Origin: Octopus sinensis
Taxonomy: Eukaryota
Direction: 5' to 3'
Length of the DNA: 10,554 bases
NCBI RefSeq assembly: GCF_006345805.1
Contig: NW_021827329.1
Coordinates: 1-10,554 of the forward strand
A program made the translations under genes and the position numbers. Positions 221 through 10,203 of this stretch are shown piece by piece (the first letter of the stretch is position 1; every line of letters starts with the position of its first letter). The notes beneath the pieces are model-generated. The model ran no database searches. It worked only from the letters and a program-made list of their open reading frames with translations, and had not been told where the DNA came from.

Positions 221-545
221 GGAGCACTCCGTCGGTTTCGACGACGAGGGTCCCAACTGATACGATCAACGGAACAGCTTGCTCGTGAGATTAACGTAAA
301 AGTGACTGAGCAATCCATAGAGACGTGTACCCCTAACGTAGTTCCCAGGGAGATTCAGCGTGACACAGAGTGTGACAAGGGTGGCCCTTTGAAATCCAGG
401 TACTACTCATTTTTGCCAGCTGAGTGGAGTGGAGCAACGTGAAATAAAGTGTCTTGCTCAAGGACACAACGCGCCGTCGGGAATCGAACTCACGACCATA
501 CGTTCGTGAGCCGAATGCCCTAACCACTAAGCCACGCGCCTTCAC
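221..545 (-). mobile_element. Full-length tRNA-derived SINE with CORE-like central motif (family B)
   Basis: Minus strand: A box TGGCTTAGTGG (524-534), B box GAGTTCGATTCC (480-491), then GTGTCCTTGAGCAAGACACTT (447-467), which resembles the CORE-SINE motif GTGACCTTGGGCAAGTCACTT; a second copy aligns over its length at 4820-5117. Confidence 0.88.
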
Positions 546-1488: not shown

Positions 1489-1605
1489 TCATATACACTC
1501 CCAAGTCGTCCCATCTGGTATAAATTATATTGGCGAATTAAGAAATAATTTGAACAAATTGGCGCTTGGGCTTGCCCCTTCGTGTATGGACGGCTTCTAT
1601 GGAAA

Positions 1606-1615
1606 CATCATTATC

Positions 1616-1660
<45 letters not shown>

Positions 1661-1682
1661 GCCATTACCGTCGTGATCGTCC

Positions 1683-1714
<32 letters not shown>

Positions 1715-1725
1715 ATCATCATCAT
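1606..1725. repeat. (CAT)n microsatellite, interrupted
   Basis: Two ATC arrays separated by GCCATTACCGTCGTGATCGTCCT. Confidence 0.95.
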
Positions 1726-1971
1726 GAATAGCAGCAGCATGGAGCTGACGTGGGAATCACTACCCGGTCGCTCGCCTTTACAAGAAATAGCAGCTAAATC
1801 CCTCTCCCTCCCTCCCTCTCTCTCCCTTTTATTACATGTTGCCGTTTTAAAACAGGACACATCGTATAATGTAGTTCTACACAGACAAAAGGGTAAAAAG
1901 AAAAATAATAATATCAATTACTGAATACATTCGCTTGCAAGTCTGATCCATCAGGATTCGCCCAGGGTTAA

Positions 1972-2895
1972 ACAACAGAATCAACAACAACAGCAACAAC
2001 ATACGCACTATCCCTATTGTTACTACTGCCACTATCACCACAGACACCACCAATTACCGCCATTTGCAACAATAATATATGCGCAATTCCAATTATTACC
2101 ACCACCACCTTCCCTGCCACTAGCACTACCCTGTCCACCACTCCACCACCACCTCCCTTCCTACCACTTTCCCCACCACCCTCACTACCACTCACTCCAT
2201 CACCCTCTCCACCGCCACCACCACCCTCTCCACCACCACCACCCTCTCCACCACCACCACCCTCACTACCACCCACTCCACCACCTTCTCCACCACTCTC
2301 ACCTCCACGACCTCCATCACCCTCTCCACCGCCACCACCACCCTCTCCACCACCACCTTCTCCACCACCCTCACTACCACCCACTCCACCACCCTCTCCA
2401 GCACTCTCCACCACTACCACCTTCTCCACCACTCTCACCTCCACGACCTCCACCACCCTCTCTACCACCACCACCCTCTCTACCACCACCACCTCCAACA
2501 ACATTGTCATCACCACTCTCTCCACCACTACCACCACCAACACCGTCGTCACCAATAACAACAACAATAACAACAGTTCTAGCACAACGCCAGTAACAAC
2601 ATCCTGTCTCTCCTCTTCTATACTTCAGCGCCACCTCAACCACCTCCACCACCGCATACGACAACAACAACATGAAAACAAATAACAACAACAACTGAAG
2701 CATCATCTTCATCGTCATCACCGTCGTTAATCAACATCATCATCAGGATCCTCACCACAACCATCATCAACATCATCATCATCATTACCATCATCATCAT
2801 CACCATCGACACCAGAGCAACCGTCACCACCCACTCCACCATCATCACCACCACCAACAACAACAACAATAACAACAACACCAGCAGCACTATCA
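1972..2895. repeat. Compound C/A-rich triplet low-complexity region (AAC/ACC/ATC) with internal minisatellite
   Basis: ACC/CAC/ATC/AAC triplets; CCACCACC(ACC)CTCT units and re-used longer blocks at 2195/2312 and 2286/2422. Confidence 0.92.
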
Positions 2896-3360
2896 ATCTA
2901 CCCGAGATGCCATCCCAATTTGAACGCTGATATAGACATACATACCTCTTCCGGTGTGTATGTACAGGGACAGGAAGTAGGGGGTTGGAGATAGAATTTC
3001 GGGGGGATTTCTGGGTAATTAATATTGTCTTTGATGATGATAATGAATGATGACGACAGCCAAAACGGTGTCGATGATTATGATGATGATGATGATGGTA
3101 ACGATGATGATGATGGTAACGATGATGAGGAGAGGACGGTTAAGGAAGAGGAGGGTCAGCAGGAGGAGGAGGAGGAGGACAACGATGACGTCGATGAAGG
3201 AGAAAATAAGGGATGATAGATTACTTAATGATGATGATGATGGGATATTAATTATGTCTTTATCAAGGGAATAATAATGATGTTGGTGGTGGTGGTGGTG
3301 GTGATGATGGTGGAGTGGGTGGTGACGGTTGCTGTGGTGTCGATGGTGATGATGATGATG
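2789..3360. repeat. Inverted repeat: 67-bp arms (2789-2855 and 3294-3360), 438-bp spacer
   Basis: CATCATCATCATCACCATCGACACCA[G/C]AGCAACCGTCACCACCCACTCCACCATCATCACCACCACC on plus at 2789 and on minus at 3360-3294; 66/67 identical. Confidence 0.93.
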
Positions 3361-3385
3361 AGGAGGAGAAGGAGGAGGAGGAGGT
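3029..3385. repeat. Compound (GAT)n/(GGT)n/(GAG)n low-complexity region
   Basis: Same triplet classes as 1972-2895 but on the opposite strand. Confidence 0.92.
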
Positions 3386-3825
3386 GGAACCACATAACGA
3401 AATGCTCAACTGTTCCTCGGACATAAAAATTTGTCCACAACTTCAACATTACTGACACCTGTCTCACCCCCCTCCCAGCCTCAGCCTTTCATTCCTGGGG
3501 ATGAGCCGCAGTTAAACAACAATAACAGCCATCACAACTCTATTACCCTCACACCACACACTTGTATACACACACACACACTTGTATATAATTCTTTCGG
3601 GGAACGTTGAATCTTGAAGCACGTAAGCTCTAAATATTAATGTAAATATTGGTTAAGACAACCTTCATATGGAAAGGGTCGAAGTCTGTCCGTAGATCAC
3701 GAAGCAACATCTCCATTAAACATGAGAGGCTTTCTGCTATTGGACCAAAGTAACACTTAAAGTGTCTCTATCCATTTTAGAAGCTTTATTCTTAGCAGTA
3801 ACAATGGTATGTTGTTTTGTTAACA

Positions 3826-4169: not shown

Positions 4170-4425
4170 TGGATCTAGGTTAGAAACCGGCTCTTTCTCT
4201 ATTGGCAAGAAATCTTGAAATAAAATTGAACAATGATACACATGCGCGCGCACGTACGTACGTATACACACATATATGTATTTATGTATGTACGTACATA
4301 CATACATACATAAATACATATATGTGTGTATACGTACGTACGTGCGCGCGCATGTGTATCATTGTTCAATTTTATTTCAAGATTTCTTGCCAATAGAGAA
4401 AGAGCCGGTTTCTAACCTAGATCCA
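4170..4425. repeat. Perfect palindrome: 123-bp arms (4170-4292 / 4303-4425), 10-nt spacer
   Basis: Base-by-base check shows 4303-4425 is the exact reverse complement of 4170-4292; explains the twin ORFs 4199-4393(-) and 4202-4396(+). Confidence 0.97.
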
Positions 4426-4819: not shown

Positions 4820-5117
4820 GGTTAGGGTATTCGGCTCACGATCGTGAAGTCGTGAGTTCGATACACAGCAGTGTTGTGTCCTTGAGCAAAACACTTTATT
4901 TCACGTTGTGCTGACTCGGCTGGTAAAAATGCGTAGTATCTGTATTTCAAAAGGTCAGACTTGTCACATCGTGTGCCTCGCTCAATCTCTCTGAGAACTA
5001 CGTTAAGGGCGCACGTGACTGTAGAGTGCTAAACCACTTACACGTTAATTTCATGAACAGGCTGTTCTGTTGATTGGATCAATTAGAACCGTAATCATCG
5101 TAACCGATGGAGTGCCT
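4820..5117 (+). mobile_element. tRNA-derived SINE (family B), 5'-truncated by ~20 nt
   Basis: GGTTAGGGTATTCGGCTCACG...GAGTTCGATAC...GTGTCCTTGAGCAAAACACTTTATTTCACG...ACCGATGGAGTGCCT aligns colinearly with the reverse complement of 221-525. Confidence 0.88.
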
Positions 5118-7330: not shown

Positions 7331-7736
7331 AAGGCGGTGAGCTGGCAGAATCGTTAGCACGCCGGGCGGAAATGCGTAGCCGTATTTCGTCTACTGTTAC
7401 GTTCTGAGTTCAAATTTCGCCGAGGTCGACTTTGCCTTTCATCCCTTCGGGGTCGATTAAATAAACACCAGTTACGCACTGAGGTCGATATAATCGACTT
7501 CATCCGTTTGTCTGTCCTTGTTTGTCCCCTCTGTGTTTAGCTCCTCGTGGGTAGTAAAGAAATAGGTATTTCGTCTGTCTTTTACGCTCTGAGTTCAAAT
7601 TCCGCCGAGGTCGACTTTGCCTTTCGTCCTTTCGGGATCATTATGTACCAGTTGCGTACTGGGGTCGAGCTAATTGACTGGCCCCACTCCCCAAATTTTT
7701 GGGCTTTGTGCCTAGAGTAGAAAAGAAAAGAATATT
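7331..7736 (+). mobile_element. tRNA-derived SINE (family C), internally duplicated (dimeric) form
   Basis: Starts AAGGCGGTGAGCTGGCAGAATCGTTAGC (A-box-like TGGCAGAATCG); the unit GTATTTCGTCT...CTGAGTTCAAATT(T/C)CGCCGAGGTCGACTTTGCCTTTC occurs at 7382 and 7566 (184-bp offset); A-rich end. Homologue at 10066-10203. Confidence 0.87.
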
Positions 7737-8058: not shown

Positions 8059-8215
8059 GGCGTGGCTGCGTGGTAAAAAGCTTGCTCTTCAACCACATCA
8101 TTCCGGGTTCAGTCCCACTGTGTAGCACCTTAAGCAAGTGTCTTCTACTATAGCCTAAGGCAGACCAAACCCTTGTGAATGGATTTGGTAGTCGGAAACT
8201 GAAACAGTCTCGCCG
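8059..8215 (+). mobile_element. tRNA-derived SINE (family D), 5' half
   Basis: GGCGTGGCTGCGTGGTAA (A box)...CCGGGTTCAGTCCC (B box)...GCACCTTAAGCAAGTGTCTTCT (CORE-like)...GGATTTGGTAGTCGGAAACTGA; aligns to 8807-8945 and stops at the internal TA/TG microsatellite. Confidence 0.85.
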
Positions 8216-8301
8216 TATATATGTATATATATATAATATATATATATAATATATATATATATATGATAATATATTATATATAATATATATATATATATAT
8301 A
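8216..8301. repeat. Interrupted (TA)n microsatellite
   Basis: TA array with single-base interruptions. Confidence 0.95.
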
Positions 8302-8520: not shown

Positions 8521-8806
8521 ATCATTTATTAATTATAAAATATGACAACATCTCTGACAGCTGTTTCGATTCAGAAATCTTTTGATGATTAATTTATAAA
8601 ATGAATCTTTTCATAGGTAGTAAAGATATACCGATTAGAAATACATGTTGAGATAACGGCTATAAAACCGTTTACTGATAGCATATATATACAAAAAGAG
8701 CCGGTTATAGAAGGACTCAATCTTACATAGGGGGAGAAGGTAAATGTAATATCATAGGGTATTGAGAAAGAGAAAAAGAAAAGGAAAAATGGAAACAGAA
8801 AAACGC
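8521..8806 (-). mobile_element. Hammerhead-bearing repeat, copy 1 (Penelope pLTR/retrozyme-like), catalytic core mutated
   Basis: Reverse complement aligns to 9339-9717 (about 9 differences in 98 nt for 8615-8712 vs 9512-9610, manual count); hammerhead reads ATGAAAA-GATTCA-28nt-TGAATC-GAAA-CAGCTG-TC-AGAG (8614-8552). Confidence 0.75.
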
Positions 8807-9171
8807 TGCTAACCAACCACATGGTTCCGGGTTCAGTCCTCCTGCGTGACATCTTGGGCAAGTGTCTTCTGCTATAACCCCGGGCCGACCAATGCCTTGT
8901 AAAGGGGATTTGGTAGACGGAAACTGATAGAAGCCTGTCGTATATATGTATGTGTGTGTGTTTGTGTGTCTGTGTTTGTCCCCCTAGCATTGCTTGACAA
9001 CCGATGCTGGTGTGTTTACGTCCCCGTAACTTAGCGGTTTGGCAAAAGAGACGACCGATAGAATAAGTACTGGCCTTACAAAGAATAAGTCCCGGGGTCG
9101 ATTTGCTCGACTAAAGGCGGTGCTCCAGCATGGCCGCAGTCAAATGACTGAAACAAGTAAAAGAGTAAAAG
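8807..9171 (+). mobile_element. tRNA-derived SINE (family D), near full length, 5'-truncated
   Basis: CAACCACATGGTTCCGGGTTCAGTCC (B box), CTTGGGCAAGTGTCTTCT, internal (TG)n, 3' part CTTGACAACCGATGCTGGTGTGTTTACG...CATGGCCGCA...GAAACAAGTAAAAGAGTAAAAG; matches 8059-8215 and 9787-10016. Confidence 0.88.
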
Positions 9172-9174
9172 TGT

Positions 9175-9312
9175 AATCCAATATAGGGAGGGGGCAGGTA
9201 GTGTATAATTTGTGTCTTAAATAAAAAGAAAAGAAGAGATTAATATATTAGAGGGTACTGAGAAGGAAAAAAGATACAACATATACGCTACCTGCGCCCC
9301 CTATGCTGGATT
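9175..9312. repeat. Two further fragments of the hammerhead-repeat 5' region (9175-9273 minus; 9281-9312 plus)
   Basis: Reverse complement of 9175-9245 (ATTAATCTCTTCTTTTCTTTTTATTTAAGACAC...CTACCTGCCCCCTCCCTATATTGGATT) matches ~9399-9465; 9281-9312 ATATACGCTACCTGCGCCCCCTATGCTGGATT matches the same motif in sense. Confidence 0.65.
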
Positions 9313-9338
9313 GTGGAATTATATATTTATAAATATAT

Positions 9339-9717
9339 GCGTTTTTCTGCTTCCATTTCCCTTTTATTTTTCTCCTTCTCAATACACTATGATATTACAT
9401 TAATCTCTTCTTTTCTTTCTTTAAGACATATAATATATACTACCTTCTCCCACTATGTTAGATTGAGTCCTATATATAATATATATAGTCCTATATATAA
9501 TATATATTAACTTCTATAACCGGCTCATTTTTGTATATATTTGCTGTTAGTTAACGGTTTTATAGCCTTTATCTCAACGTGTGTTTCTGATCGGTATATC
9601 TTTACTACCTCTGAAGAGATTCATCATATAATGATTTTAATTTTATAAATTAATTATCTAAAGTTTTCTGAATCGAAACAGCTGTCAGAGATGTTGTCAT
9701 ACTTTAGAATTAATAAA
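9339..9717 (+). mobile_element. Hammerhead-bearing repeat, copy 2 (Penelope pLTR/retrozyme-like)
   Basis: Inverted homologue of 8521-8806; ends with the hammerhead, AATTAATAAA and an (AAT)n tail. Confidence 0.75.
9604..9693 (+). ncRNA. Type I (minimal, probably dimer-acting) hammerhead ribozyme motif
   Basis: CTGAAGA (9611-9617, CUGANGA core), stem II GATTCA 9618-9623 / TGAATC 9669-9674, GAAA 9675-9678, palindromic stem III ACAGCTGT 9678-9685, GTC cleavage triplet 9684-9686; stem I only 2 clear pairs (CT 9609-9610 / AG 9687-9688). Confidence 0.75.
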
Positions 9718-9718
9718 A

Positions 9719-9783
<65 letters not shown>
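9718..9783. repeat. (AAT)n microsatellite
   Basis: Perfect array directly after the hammerhead repeat. Confidence 0.97.
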
Positions 9784-9784
<1 letters not shown>

Positions 9785-9786
9785 CA

Positions 9787-10016
9787 TGTGTGCGTGCGTC
9801 TTCGTGTCTGCGTTTGTTCCCCTACCACCGCTTGACAACCGGTACTGGTGTGTTTACGATCTCGTAGGTTAGCTGTTCGGTAAAAGAGAGCGATTGAATG
9901 AGTACAGGGCTTTAAAAAAATAAGTCCTGGGGTAGATTCATTCGACTAGGGAATTCTCTAATGCGATGCTCCAGTATGGCCGCATTATAATGCCAGAAAC
10001 AAGTAAAAAATAAAAG
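9787..10016 (+). mobile_element. tRNA-derived SINE (family D), 3' half
   Basis: TG-rich start then CTTGACAACCGGTACTGGTGTGTTTACG...AATAAGTCCTGGGGT...GCTCCAGTATGGCCGCA...GAAACAAGTAAAA; aligns to ~8950-9171. Confidence 0.85.
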
Positions 10017-10065
10017 GTACGCGTGTGCATGTGCGTGGGTTCAGGATAACCAAAAAGCAGTTCGA

Positions 10066-10203
10066 AGTACTTACTCTATCGACTCTGAAAGGATGAAAGG
10101 CAAAGTTGACCTCGGCGGAATTTGAACGCAGAACGTAAAGACGGATGAAATGCCGCTAGGTATTTTACCCGGCATGCTAATAATTCTGCTAAGTCGCCGC
10201 CTT
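10066..10203 (-). mobile_element. tRNA-derived SINE (family C), single unit, 3'-truncated
   Basis: Minus strand AAGGCGGCGACTTAGCAGAATTATTAGCATGCCGGG...CGTTCAAATTCCGCCGAGGTCAACTTTGCCTTTCATCCTTTC aligns with 7331-7465. Confidence 0.87.

What the first reader, a model, noticed from the sequence alone, without database searches (positions are those of the whole stretch)
9604..9693. Intact type I hammerhead ribozyme core in an AT-rich repeat
Seen: all conserved core nucleotides (CUGAAGA, GAAA, GUC), a perfect 6-bp stem II and a palindromic ACAGCUGU stem III, followed by AATAAA and an (AAT)n tail. Known: minimal type I hammerheads with a short palindromic stem III self-cleave as dimers (newt satellite 2) and mark Penelope-like element pseudo-LTRs and non-LTR retrozymes, which yield small circular RNAs in metazoans. 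Inference: this is a cephalopod retrozyme or non-autonomous Penelope-type family, possibly undescribed. Caveats: stem I has only 2 clear pairs, and stem II has a 45-nt loop with a copy-specific 17-nt insertion forming its own ATCAT/ATGAT hairpin.
Basis: partly seen in the sequence, partly recalled or inferred. Interest (0 to 1): 0.85.

Follow-up and report, generated by a model that had tools for sequence, protein, structure and literature searches.

The report
Hammerhead-like motif in octopus repeat
One copy of a short AT-rich mobile repeat in an octopus genome spells the core of a hammerhead self-cleaving RNA, but the neighbouring copy has lost that core and a competing fold is better supported, so it is probably not a working ribozyme.

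Summary
Stem I has only 2 contiguous pairs and loop 2 is 45 nt. Rfam's Hammerhead_1 model aligns full length but scores 18.3 bits against a threshold of 34. That is unlikely in one window (about 7e-4), yet roughly 170 such hits are expected by chance in a 2.7-Gb genome.

The motif sits 31 nt from the 3' end of a 280-380-bp interspersed repeat of octopod DNA. The window holds three copies or fragments: A 9339-9717(+), B 8806-8525(-) and C 9292-9177(-). Copy B has AUGAAAA, so essential C3 and G8 are lost. Both changes are compensated in an alternative helix, P1 (9610-16/9702-08), which buries the box (p about 0.001-0.002). The hammerhead fold is about 1e-10 of the monomer ensemble.

The window shows no tandem arrangement and no RT or GIY-YIG ORF. 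Copy A ends in AATAAA plus an (AAT)24 tail.

Best reading: the structured 3' domain of a non-autonomous retroposon, with the hammerhead likeness a coincidence or a relic. A Penelope-type minimal hammerhead is not excluded (about 0.3). The decisive family-consensus test could not be run, because no further copies were reachable.

The parts
9339..9717 (+). Copy A of the interspersed repeat (about 379 bp). It starts GCGTTTTTCTG and ends AATTAATAAA.
   Evidence: Alignment with copy B; blastn and nhmmer of the element against the window.
9611..9617 (+). CUGAAGA, which matches the hammerhead CUGANGA box (C3-A9).
   Evidence: Sequence; descriptor scan; Rfam Hammerhead_1 alignment.
9618..9674 (+). Stem II / P2: GAUUCA 9618-9623 pairs with UGAAUC 9669-9674 (6 WC bp), closing a 45-nt AT-rich loop. 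About 17 nt of the loop (9623-9639) is absent from copy B.
   Evidence: The helix is identical in A and B, so it gives no covariation information.
9675..9686 (+). GAAA (9675-78), palindrome ACAGCUGU (9678-85, the candidate helix III) and the putative cleavage-site C17 (9686).
9610..9616 (+). 5' strand of the alternative helix P1 (UCUGAAG). It overlaps the hammerhead box.
   Evidence: MFE fold. All 7 pairs are kept in both copies, with 2 compensatory changes.
9702..9708 (+). 3' strand of the alternative helix P1 (CUUUAGA).
   Evidence: In copy B, C9702>U and G9707>U compensate G9616>A and C9611>A. Simulations give p=8.5e-4 and 2.1e-3.
9678..9697 (+). Alternative hairpin P3: 9678-82 and 9684-86 pair with 9690-97 (8 bp, 1 bulge, AGA loop).
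   Evidence: MFE fold. Identical in A and B.
9712..9781 (+). AATAAA followed by an (AAT)24 microsatellite tail.
   Evidence: A candidate 11-bp target-site duplication is ATAAATATATG 9329-9339 / ATAAATACATG 9778-9788 (weak, because the context is AT-rich).
8525..8806 (-). Copy B of the same repeat (about 282 bp), about 92% identical to A where alignable. Its box reads AUGAAAA (8614->8608), P1 is UAUGAAA 8615->8609 with UUUUAUA 8540->8534, and stem II is 8607->8602 with 8573->8568.
   Evidence: (I3, I6). No hammerhead hit.
9177..9292 (-). Fragment C: the 5' part of the repeat (about positions 1-130), inverted and head-to-head with copy A across a 46-bp spacer. It is cut off by the 3' end of a SINE and has no hammerhead region.
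   Evidence: blastn and nhmmer; alignment.
8799..9176 (+). Context: a composite tRNA-derived octopus SINE (5'-truncated head with B box, (TG)n, body) lying between copy B and fragment C.
   Evidence: (D15, D16, D18, D20). The same head/body pairing occurs in O. sinensis and O. bimaculoides loci. SINE peptides are 84-87% identical to O. bimaculoides proteins.

Best explanation
The 90-nt segment is the 3'-terminal domain of a short (about 280-380 bp), AT-rich, non-coding, non-autonomous interspersed repeat of an octopod genome.

Shown:
- The repeat is a discrete unit with a shared 5' end and a shared 3' end (AATTAATAAA).
- Three copies or fragments occur within 1.2 kb, in different orientations.
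- Copy A carries an (AAT)24 tail.

In copy A the domain spells a complete hammerhead core, but this is most likely not a working, selected ribozyme. The box CUGAAG is one strand of a 7-bp helix (P1) with CUUUAGA 85 nt downstream. Together with stem II (P2) and a hairpin (P3), P1 forms a three-way junction just upstream of the tail. The sister copy has lost two essential core bases yet keeps P1 through two compensatory changes.

Inferred, not shown:
- The element spreads through a Pol II-type RNA copied by the reverse transcriptase of an autonomous LINE.
- Dong/R4, which targets (TAA)n in molluscs and is the most recently active LINE group in Octopus vulgaris, or RTE, is the obvious candidate partner.
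- The structured 3' domain serves as the recognition or priming handle for that enzyme.
- The hammerhead likeness is then either a coincidence or a relic of an older hammerhead-bearing module that is no longer needed for propagation.
For: - Repeat structure and ends.
- Copy B box AUGAAAA (C3>A, G8>A). No hammerhead hit for B.
- The MFE of copy A pairs the box in P1.
- All 21 pairs of P1/P2/P3 are kept in both copies, with 2 compensated double changes, both in P1.
- Probability of that under random substitution: 8.5e-4 for the MFE pairs; 2.1e-3 for any helix in any register.
- Hammerhead-compatible folds reach -4.2 kcal/mol against an MFE of -17.8, an ensemble fraction of about 1.6e-10.
- Helix I has 2 contiguous pairs, and the flank duplex is no better than shuffles.
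- Rfam Hammerhead_1 scores 18.3 bits against 34, with about 170 chance hits expected per genome.
- No tandem arrangement.
- No RT or GIY-YIG remnants among the window ORFs examined.
- AATAAA + (AAT)24 tail and a candidate 11-bp TSD.
- Dong targets (TAA)n in molluscs (PMC7998251). Dong-R4 is the most recently active LINE group in O. vulgaris (PMC13282606).
Against: - Only two informative copies exist, so the covariation rests on a single pairwise comparison.
- P1 in copy B is weak (-1.5 kcal/mol) and is not in B's MFE.
- Neither copy folds more stably than shuffles (z = -0.13 and +0.26).
- A complete core, a perfect 6-bp helix II with G10.1-C11.1, an 8-nt palindromic helix III and a GUC triplet are together an unlikely coincidence for any one structured element. 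This architecture also matches Penelope-type minimal hammerheads, which are expected to be common in octopus genomes (31 recently active PLE families).
- No LINE partner sharing the 3' end was identified.
- Copy B has no clean (AAT)n tail.
- T-runs and the lack of A/B boxes mean it is not a classical Pol III SINE.
Confidence: 0.5

Rival explanations
1. This is a genuine Penelope-type minimal type I hammerhead. The repeat is a non-autonomous or truncated derivative of a Penelope-like element (a solo pseudo-LTR-like unit). The motif cleaves weakly, as a dimer through the palindromic helix III, when two units lie on one transcript. Copy B is a decayed copy. P1 is an inactive alternative conformer, or the compensation is a coincidence.
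For: - The core is intact in copy A.
- Rfam Hammerhead_1 aligns full length.
- The motif is improbable at window level.
- The architecture (helix II 6 bp, palindromic helix III, helix I 2 bp) equals that described for PLE min-HHRs, especially D. virilis Penelope, and those also cleave poorly in vitro (PMC4209133).
- PLE motifs mostly occur as single elements, and dual motifs on opposite strands 100-700 bp apart are reported. Here A and B are divergent, about 1 kb apart, with about 370 bp of later SINE between them.
- Fragment C lies head-to-head with A, and PLE insertions often carry adjacent inverted copies (PMC8557442).
- Cephalopods have PLEs and Rfam-level hammerheads (235 in giant squid, PMC6962438).
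Against: - The core is broken at two essential positions in the only sister copy.
- Those changes are compensated in a helix that buries the box. If the changes arose in active source copies, the family propagates without an intact core.
- Loop 2 is 28-45 nt in both copies and helix I is missing in both, so the common ancestor of A and B was already non-canonical.
- The score is 16 bits below the Rfam threshold.
- No RT/GIY-YIG and no tandem or pLTR arrangement were found in 10.5 kb.
- The AATAAA/(AAT)n tail and the shared precise 5' end are not typical of randomly truncated PLEs.
- The hammerhead fold is about 1e-10 of the monomer ensemble.
Confidence: 0.3
2. This is pure chance in neutrally decaying repeat DNA. 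The 3' domain has no selected RNA structure at all. The hammerhead letters in copy A and the two compensated pairs between A and B are both coincidences.
For: - About 170 chance hits at >=18.3 bits are expected per 2.7-Gb genome for Hammerhead_1 alone.
- A/B divergence is uniform at about 8% along the element, with no clear excess conservation of the 3' domain.
- Fold energies are not different from shuffles.
- P1 in copy B is only -1.5 kcal/mol.
- All four P1 differences are GC(A)/AT(B), as AT-biased decay would give.
Against: Two compensated double changes in one helix have p of about 0.001-0.002 under random substitution. That helix was predicted from copy A alone, before copy B was examined. 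The motif also has extras beyond the minimum: a G10.1-C11.1 pair, an 8-nt palindrome and a GUC triplet.
Confidence: 0.15

Closest known systems
Minimal hammerheads of Penelope-like elements (Cervera & de la Pena 2014, PMC4209133), especially the Drosophila virilis Penelope variant
   Same: Type I topology. Intact CUGANGA/GAAA/GUC core in copy A. Long helix II (6 bp). Small palindromic helix III that would extend in a dimer. Very short helix I (2 bp). Mostly solitary genomic copies.
   Different: Loop 2 is 45 nt (28 nt in copy B) rather than a few nt. [quoted passage not shown] No pLTR/RT/GIY-YIG context was found in the window. The core is not conserved in the sister copy. The element has an AATAAA/(AAT)n tail.
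Metazoan non-LTR retrozymes / newt satellite 2 (Cervera & de la Pena 2020, PMC7229834)
   Same: Unit size of about 300-400 bp, low GC, type I motif with a weak palindromic helix III.
   Different: Retrozymes are head-to-tail tandem arrays with one conserved, canonical hammerhead per unit (6-bp helix I, loop-loop contacts). Here the copies are dispersed or inverted and tailed, with no helix I and no tandem arrangement.
SINE-like elements carrying hammerheads (Schistosoma Sm-alpha; from general knowledge and as cited in PMC4209133)
   Same: A short non-autonomous retroposon with a hammerhead-like motif in its body.
   Different: Sm-alpha has a tRNA-like Pol III head and a canonical, active, conserved hammerhead. 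This element has no A/B boxes, has many T-runs, and its motif is sub-threshold and not conserved.
Structured 3' tails of LINE-dependent SINEs, i.e. stringent 3'-end recognition such as the eel UnaL2/UnaSINE1 stem-loop (general knowledge, not tested here); Dong/R4 LINEs targeting (TAA)n (PMC7998251)
   Same: A branched stem-loop immediately upstream of a short-repeat tail. A helix is maintained by compensatory change. An (AAT)n=(TAA)n array sits at the 3' junction of copy A.
   Different: No partner LINE with the same 3' end was found. Copy B lacks a clean (TAA)n. The structure is weak and AT-rich.
'HHR_half_core' cases in Naiad PLEs (Craig et al. 2021, PMC8557442)
   Same: CUGANGA and GAAA boxes are separated by an unusually long spacer (35-50 nt there; 57 nt in A and 40 nt in B here) near a 3' end. 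Naiad remnants exist in Octopus, and Naiads prefer AT microsatellite targets.
   Different: Those authors did not regard them as canonical hammerheads. No Naiad coding sequence is present here, and sequence relatedness could not be tested.

Membership tests
Hammerhead ribozyme, type I (Rfam RF00163) | Conserved core C3-U-G-A-N-G-A9 ... G12-A-A ... A15.1-U16.1, H17 | tested here: met
   Copy A has all positions: 9611-17, 9675-78, 9685-86. Copy B has A3 and A8 instead.
Hammerhead ribozyme, type I (Rfam RF00163) | Covariance-model score at or above the curated gathering score (34 bits) | tested here: not met
   No hit at gathering thresholds. 18.3 bits in a 103-nt search. Nothing for copy B.
Hammerhead ribozyme, type I (Rfam RF00163) | Helix I of several base pairs starting directly at N1.1-N2.1 | tested here: not met
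   2 contiguous pairs. The CM deletes or mismatches 4 of 6 positions. The flank duplex is no better than shuffles.
Hammerhead ribozyme, type I (Rfam RF00163) | Core and helices conserved or covarying among family members | tested here: not met
   1 of 2 copies has the core. The hammerhead helices never vary, and the only covariation supports a competing helix. With n=2 this is provisional.
Hammerhead ribozyme, type I (Rfam RF00163) | Self-cleavage 3' of H17 | not testable with these tools
   Needs in vitro transcription. Thermodynamically the hammerhead-compatible ensemble fraction is about 1.6e-10 in the monomer.
Penelope-like element minimal hammerhead | Architecture: helix II 6-8 bp, short helix I, minimal or palindromic helix III suited to dimer action | tested here: met
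   6 bp / 2 bp / ACAGCUGU palindrome, compared with the description in PMC4209133. The 45-nt loop 2 is atypical.
Penelope-like element minimal hammerhead | Location in pseudo-LTRs flanking, or truncated from, an RT + GIY-YIG ORF | tested here: not met
   No such coding remnant is apparent among the 120 stop-free stretches of >=45 aa or the ORF list. The 20 pieces scanned against Pfam gave no RT/GIY-YIG hit. This covers only 10.5 kb.
Metazoan non-LTR retrozyme | Head-to-tail tandem repeats (150-450 bp units), each with a type I hammerhead | tested here: not met
   No tandem array of the unit. The copies are inverted or dispersed and separately tailed.
Metazoan non-LTR retrozyme | Expression as about unit-length circular RNA | not testable with these tools
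   No expression data were accessible.
LINE-dependent non-autonomous retroposon (SINE-like) | Discrete unit with the same 5' and 3' termini in independent copies | tested here: met
   A, B and probably C start at GCGT...; A and B end at AATTAATAAA; the flanks are unrelated.
LINE-dependent non-autonomous retroposon (SINE-like) | A-rich or short-repeat 3' tail and target-site duplication | tested here: inconclusive
   Copy A has (AAT)24 and a 10/11 match over 11 bp flanking the element plus tail, but the context is AT-rich. Copy B has only a degenerate A/T tail and no TSD was seen.
LINE-dependent non-autonomous retroposon (SINE-like) | Internal Pol III promoter (tRNA/5S/7SL head) | tested here: not met
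   No tRNA-like region. No A/B boxes, and several T4-5 runs from position 4 onward. A Pol II-type transcript is therefore inferred.
LINE-dependent non-autonomous retroposon (SINE-like) | 3' end shared with an autonomous LINE partner | not testable with these tools
   No match to the tail was found in 110 kb of cephalopod DNA fetched. No octopus LINE library was available.

The most novel reading that the evidence does not exclude
An octopus family of tailed, dispersed, LINE-mobilised (not Penelope or retrozyme) short retroposons carries a functional minimal hammerhead with an exceptionally long loop 2 and almost no helix I. A competing helix (P1) that buries the CUGANGA box switches its activity. 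Subfamilies differ in whether the ribozyme is on (A type) or lost (B type).
Probability: 0.15. Interest if true: 0.55.

Novelty: new member of a known kind. Interest (0 to 1): 0.25.

Why it matters
If the motif were a conserved, active hammerhead, it would add a cephalopod family. It would also be an unusual architecture (long loop 2, 2-bp helix I, competing helix) for the ribozymes tied to retroelements, and it would link hammerheads to tailed, dispersed elements rather than tandem retrozymes.

As the evidence stands it is mainly a cautionary case. A complete hammerhead core with a good helix II can occur in a single repeat copy without family-level conservation, so sub-threshold motif hits in large repeat-rich genomes need a consensus and covariation check before being called ribozymes.

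The small positive result is a candidate structured 3' domain, the P1-P2-P3 junction, in an undescribed octopus repeat.

Tried and rejected
Searches for more copies of the repeat, all empty:
- Exact-pattern scans with a 5' anchor (ATCGGTATATCTTTACTACC) and a 3' anchor (GAATCGAAACAGCTGTCAGAG): the 3' anchor in viral contigs, both anchors in metagenome contigs and genome contigs.
- A protein search with the repeat's longest open frame.
- An exact look-up of 10 window ORFs.
- A full-text k-mer search of papers.

Octopus DNA was reached indirectly, from SINE peptides to O. bimaculoides proteins to FAM98 orthologues to NCBI loci. About 57 kb of Octopus and about 53 kb of other cephalopod-like DNA contained no copy. 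UniRef-only proteins were not on record. The supplement of PMC8557442, which holds PLE consensus sequences, is not held.

Alternative readings that were rejected:
- A type III permutation or another register. A second stem III register (ACAGC/GUUGU, C9698) exists but has a 1-bp helix I.
- An 8-bp helix I displaced by 7 nt (9596-9603/9687-9694). It is not adjacent to the core and is no better than shuffles.
- MITE or Helitron: no terminal inverted repeats or diagnostic ends.
- Classical Pol III SINE: no promoter, and T-runs are present.
- A and B as arms of one inverted duplication: the flanks are not homologous.
- Rfam snoRNA and miRNA hits at E of about 4-10 were treated as noise.

Full report
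OBSERVATION.
The region reads ...ACUACCU-CUGAAGA-GAUUCA-[45 nt]-UGAAUC-GAAA-CAGCUGU-C-AGAGAUG.... A descriptor scan of both strands finds exactly one hammerhead-like site in the window:
- box 9611-9617;
- 6 Watson-Crick pairs in stem II (9618-23/9669-74);
- loop 2 of 45 nt;
- GAAA 9675-78;
- A15.1-U16.1 closing the palindrome ACAGCUGU (9678-85);
- C17 at 9686;
- 2 contiguous pairs in stem I.

AATAAA (9712-17) and an (AAT)24 array follow.

IS IT MORE THAN CHANCE?
- None of 3000 dinucleotide shuffles of the window reproduces box + 6-bp WC stem II + GAAA + stem III. With stem II of >=4 bp the rate is 0.014 per window.
- Rfam finds nothing at gathering thresholds, and no hammerhead at E<=10 in a 501-nt search.
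- In a 103-nt search, Hammerhead_1 (RF00163) aligns over its whole length (9607-9692) at 18.3 bits against a gathering score of 34, E=0.028. The score is penalised by the roughly 46-nt insertion in loop 2 and a poor helix I.
- Rescaled, this is about 7e-4 per window for that family alone, but about 170 chance hits in a 2.7-Gb genome.

The motif is notable in one window and unremarkable at genome scale.

WHERE IT SITS.
The window is octopod DNA. Peptides translated from its SINEs match Octopus bimaculoides proteins at 84-87% identity. The same SINE halves occur in O. sinensis and O. bimaculoides loci.

The motif lies 31 nt from the 3' end of a discrete repeat:
- Copy A is 9339-9717 (+).
- Copy B is 8806-8525 (-). 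It is about 92% identical to A where alignable and lacks three segments (39, 41 and 17 nt).
- Fragment C is an inverted 5' fragment at 9292-9177, head-to-head with A.
- A 5'-truncated composite tRNA-derived SINE (8799-9176) lies between B and C.

A and B share both termini (GCGTTTTTCTG ... AATTAATAAA) but not flanks. A has the (AAT)24 tail and a possible 11-bp target duplication. B has only a degenerate A/T stretch.

The unit has no tRNA-like head and has T4-5 runs from its fourth base. It is therefore not a Pol III SINE.

No unit is in tandem with another. No RT or GIY-YIG remnant is apparent among the 25 ORFs of >=70 aa or the 120 stop-free stretches of >=45 aa, and the 20 pieces scanned against Pfam gave no such hit.

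THE SISTER COPY.
In copy B the box reads AUGAAAA. C3 and G8, both essential and paired with each other in the active fold, are both A. B gets no hammerhead hit even in a 93-nt search. Stems II and III and the 2-bp stem I are identical in A and B, so they carry no covariation information.

A COMPETING FOLD.
The minimum-free-energy fold of copy A was predicted before B was examined. It does not form the hammerhead. UCUGAAG (9610-16) pairs with CUUUAGA (9702-08) as helix P1. Stem II is kept as P2. Positions 9678-86 pair with 9690-97 as P3.

Between 9590 and 9717 the two copies differ by seven substitutions. Four of them are the two box changes and their exact P1 partners:
- C9611-G9707 becomes A-U;
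- G9616-C9702 becomes A-U.

All 21 pairs of P1/P2/P3 hold in both copies. Random placement of seven substitutions gives two or more compensated pairs in A's MFE structure with p=8.5e-4. It gives two compensated pairs in one uninterrupted helix of any register with p=2.1e-3.

Hammerhead-compatible folds reach only -4.2 kcal/mol against -17.8 for the MFE, an ensemble fraction of about 1.6e-10.

Caveats:
- Only two sequences are compared.
- P1 is -5.2 kcal/mol in A but only -1.5 in B, and it is absent from B's own MFE.
- Neither region folds better than shuffles.

INFERENCE.
If the four changes arose in active source copies, which is the usual way subfamily differences arise, then selection kept P1. 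At least one lineage also propagated without a hammerhead core, so the ribozyme is not needed for this family's spread. If the changes arose after insertion, the compensation is a 1-in-500 to 1-in-1000 coincidence.

Either way, nothing here shows selection for the hammerhead itself. The common ancestor of A and B already had a loop 2 of >=28 nt and no helix I.

I therefore favour (0.5) a structured 3' domain of a LINE-dependent, Pol II-transcribed non-autonomous retroposon. The (AAT)n=(TAA)n tail points to Dong/R4. Those elements target (TAA)n in molluscs (PMC7998251) and are the most recently active LINEs in O. vulgaris (PMC13282606). RTE is the other candidate. This partner assignment is an inference. 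No partner was found.

THE RIVAL.
Penelope-like elements carry minimal type I hammerheads with long helix II, short helix I (2 bp in D. virilis) and a small palindromic helix III. They act as dimers, cleave poorly in vitro, occur mostly as single truncated copies, and sometimes occur as pairs on opposite strands (PMC4209133). PLE insertions often have adjacent inverted copies (PMC8557442).

Octopus has active PLEs, and the giant squid genome has 235 Rfam Hammerhead_1 hits (PMC6962438). The architecture here fits that description apart from loop 2. A complete core plus a palindrome is an unlikely accident for any one element. I give this reading 0.3, and pure chance without any selected structure 0.15.

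RETROZYME MEMBERSHIP.
This is not met. Retrozymes are defined by head-to-tail tandem units with conserved canonical hammerheads (PMC7229834).

WHAT COULD NOT BE DONE.
The decisive test is a family consensus from many genomic copies. It was not possible because:
- pattern scans of the three public collections were empty;
- the protein and ORF look-ups were empty;
- the about 110 kb of cephalopod DNA fetched through FAM98 orthologues holds no copy.

VERDICT.
The ribozyme, retrozyme and PLE interpretation is only partly supported at the level of motif architecture, and it is weakened by the sister copy, the competing helix and the genomic context. This is an ordinary, apparently undescribed octopus repeat with a sub-threshold hammerhead-like motif in one copy. 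Interest is low to moderate.

Noticed in passing
L004:14757-14790 (-), context 14735-14900: An ENA contig with a cephalopod-like FAM98A (64% identity to Octopus) holds a compact hammerhead-like motif: CCACA-CUGAAGA-GUUCU-GAU-AGAAC-GAAA-CAGGUCUGU-C-UGUGG, with helix I 5 bp, helix II 5 bp and the same ACAG/CUGU helix III as the window motif. It lies directly after a tRNA-like SINE head (A and B boxes) and before a long (TA)n. Rfam gives sub-threshold scores (Hammerhead_3 26.6 bits against 48.5). It may be a hammerhead-bearing SINE.
   Followed up: partly
window 4170-4425: A 256-bp near-perfect palindrome: arms of 127 nt, 99% complementary, with a 2-nt spacer. It is flanked by (ACAT)n/(ATGT)n arrays. 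It could be a foldback element or an assembly artefact.
   Followed up: no
window 8799-9176, 8075-8226, 9779-10018; L001 34660-35161 and 15281-15566; L002 3300-4269: Two apparent SINE families are the halves of one composite element: a tRNA-derived head with a B box, then an internal (TG)n/(TA)n microsatellite, then the body. The same pairing recurs in O. sinensis and O. bimaculoides loci.
   Followed up: partly
window 9177-9338: Fragment C of the repeat lies head-to-head with copy A across a 46-bp spacer. On the minus strand the order is C(1-130), SINE, B(1-379), and the SINE's 5' junction falls exactly on B's first base. C and B may once have been adjacent in the same orientation, with a deletion at the SINE insertion, but this is unproven.
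   Followed up: partly
window 7370-7464, 7579-7639, 10071-10165: A third short repeat family (GAGTTCAAATTYCGCCGAGGTCGACTTTGCCTTTCATCC...) is present in three copies, one of them inverted.
   Followed up: no
window 1600-3400: Long, imperfect, coding-like trinucleotide arrays ((CAT)n, (CCA/CCT)n, (GAT)n, (GGT)n) are arranged as inverted partners, for example 2789-2868 with 3281-3360 at 95% complementarity. They give long spurious low-complexity ORFs on both strands.
   Followed up: no
window 224-425 and 4914-5115: A 202-nt inverted repeat pair (77% complementary) 4.5 kb apart, which is another dispersed repeat family. D19 (394-446/920-972) shares part of it.
   Followed up: no
L001 7299-7739 and 8844-9284; 12130-12843; 18557-21303: The O. 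sinensis FAM98A locus contains a duplicated 147-aa ORF and several non-LTR reverse-transcriptase fragments in introns and flanks. None shares the 3' tail of the window repeat.
   Followed up: no
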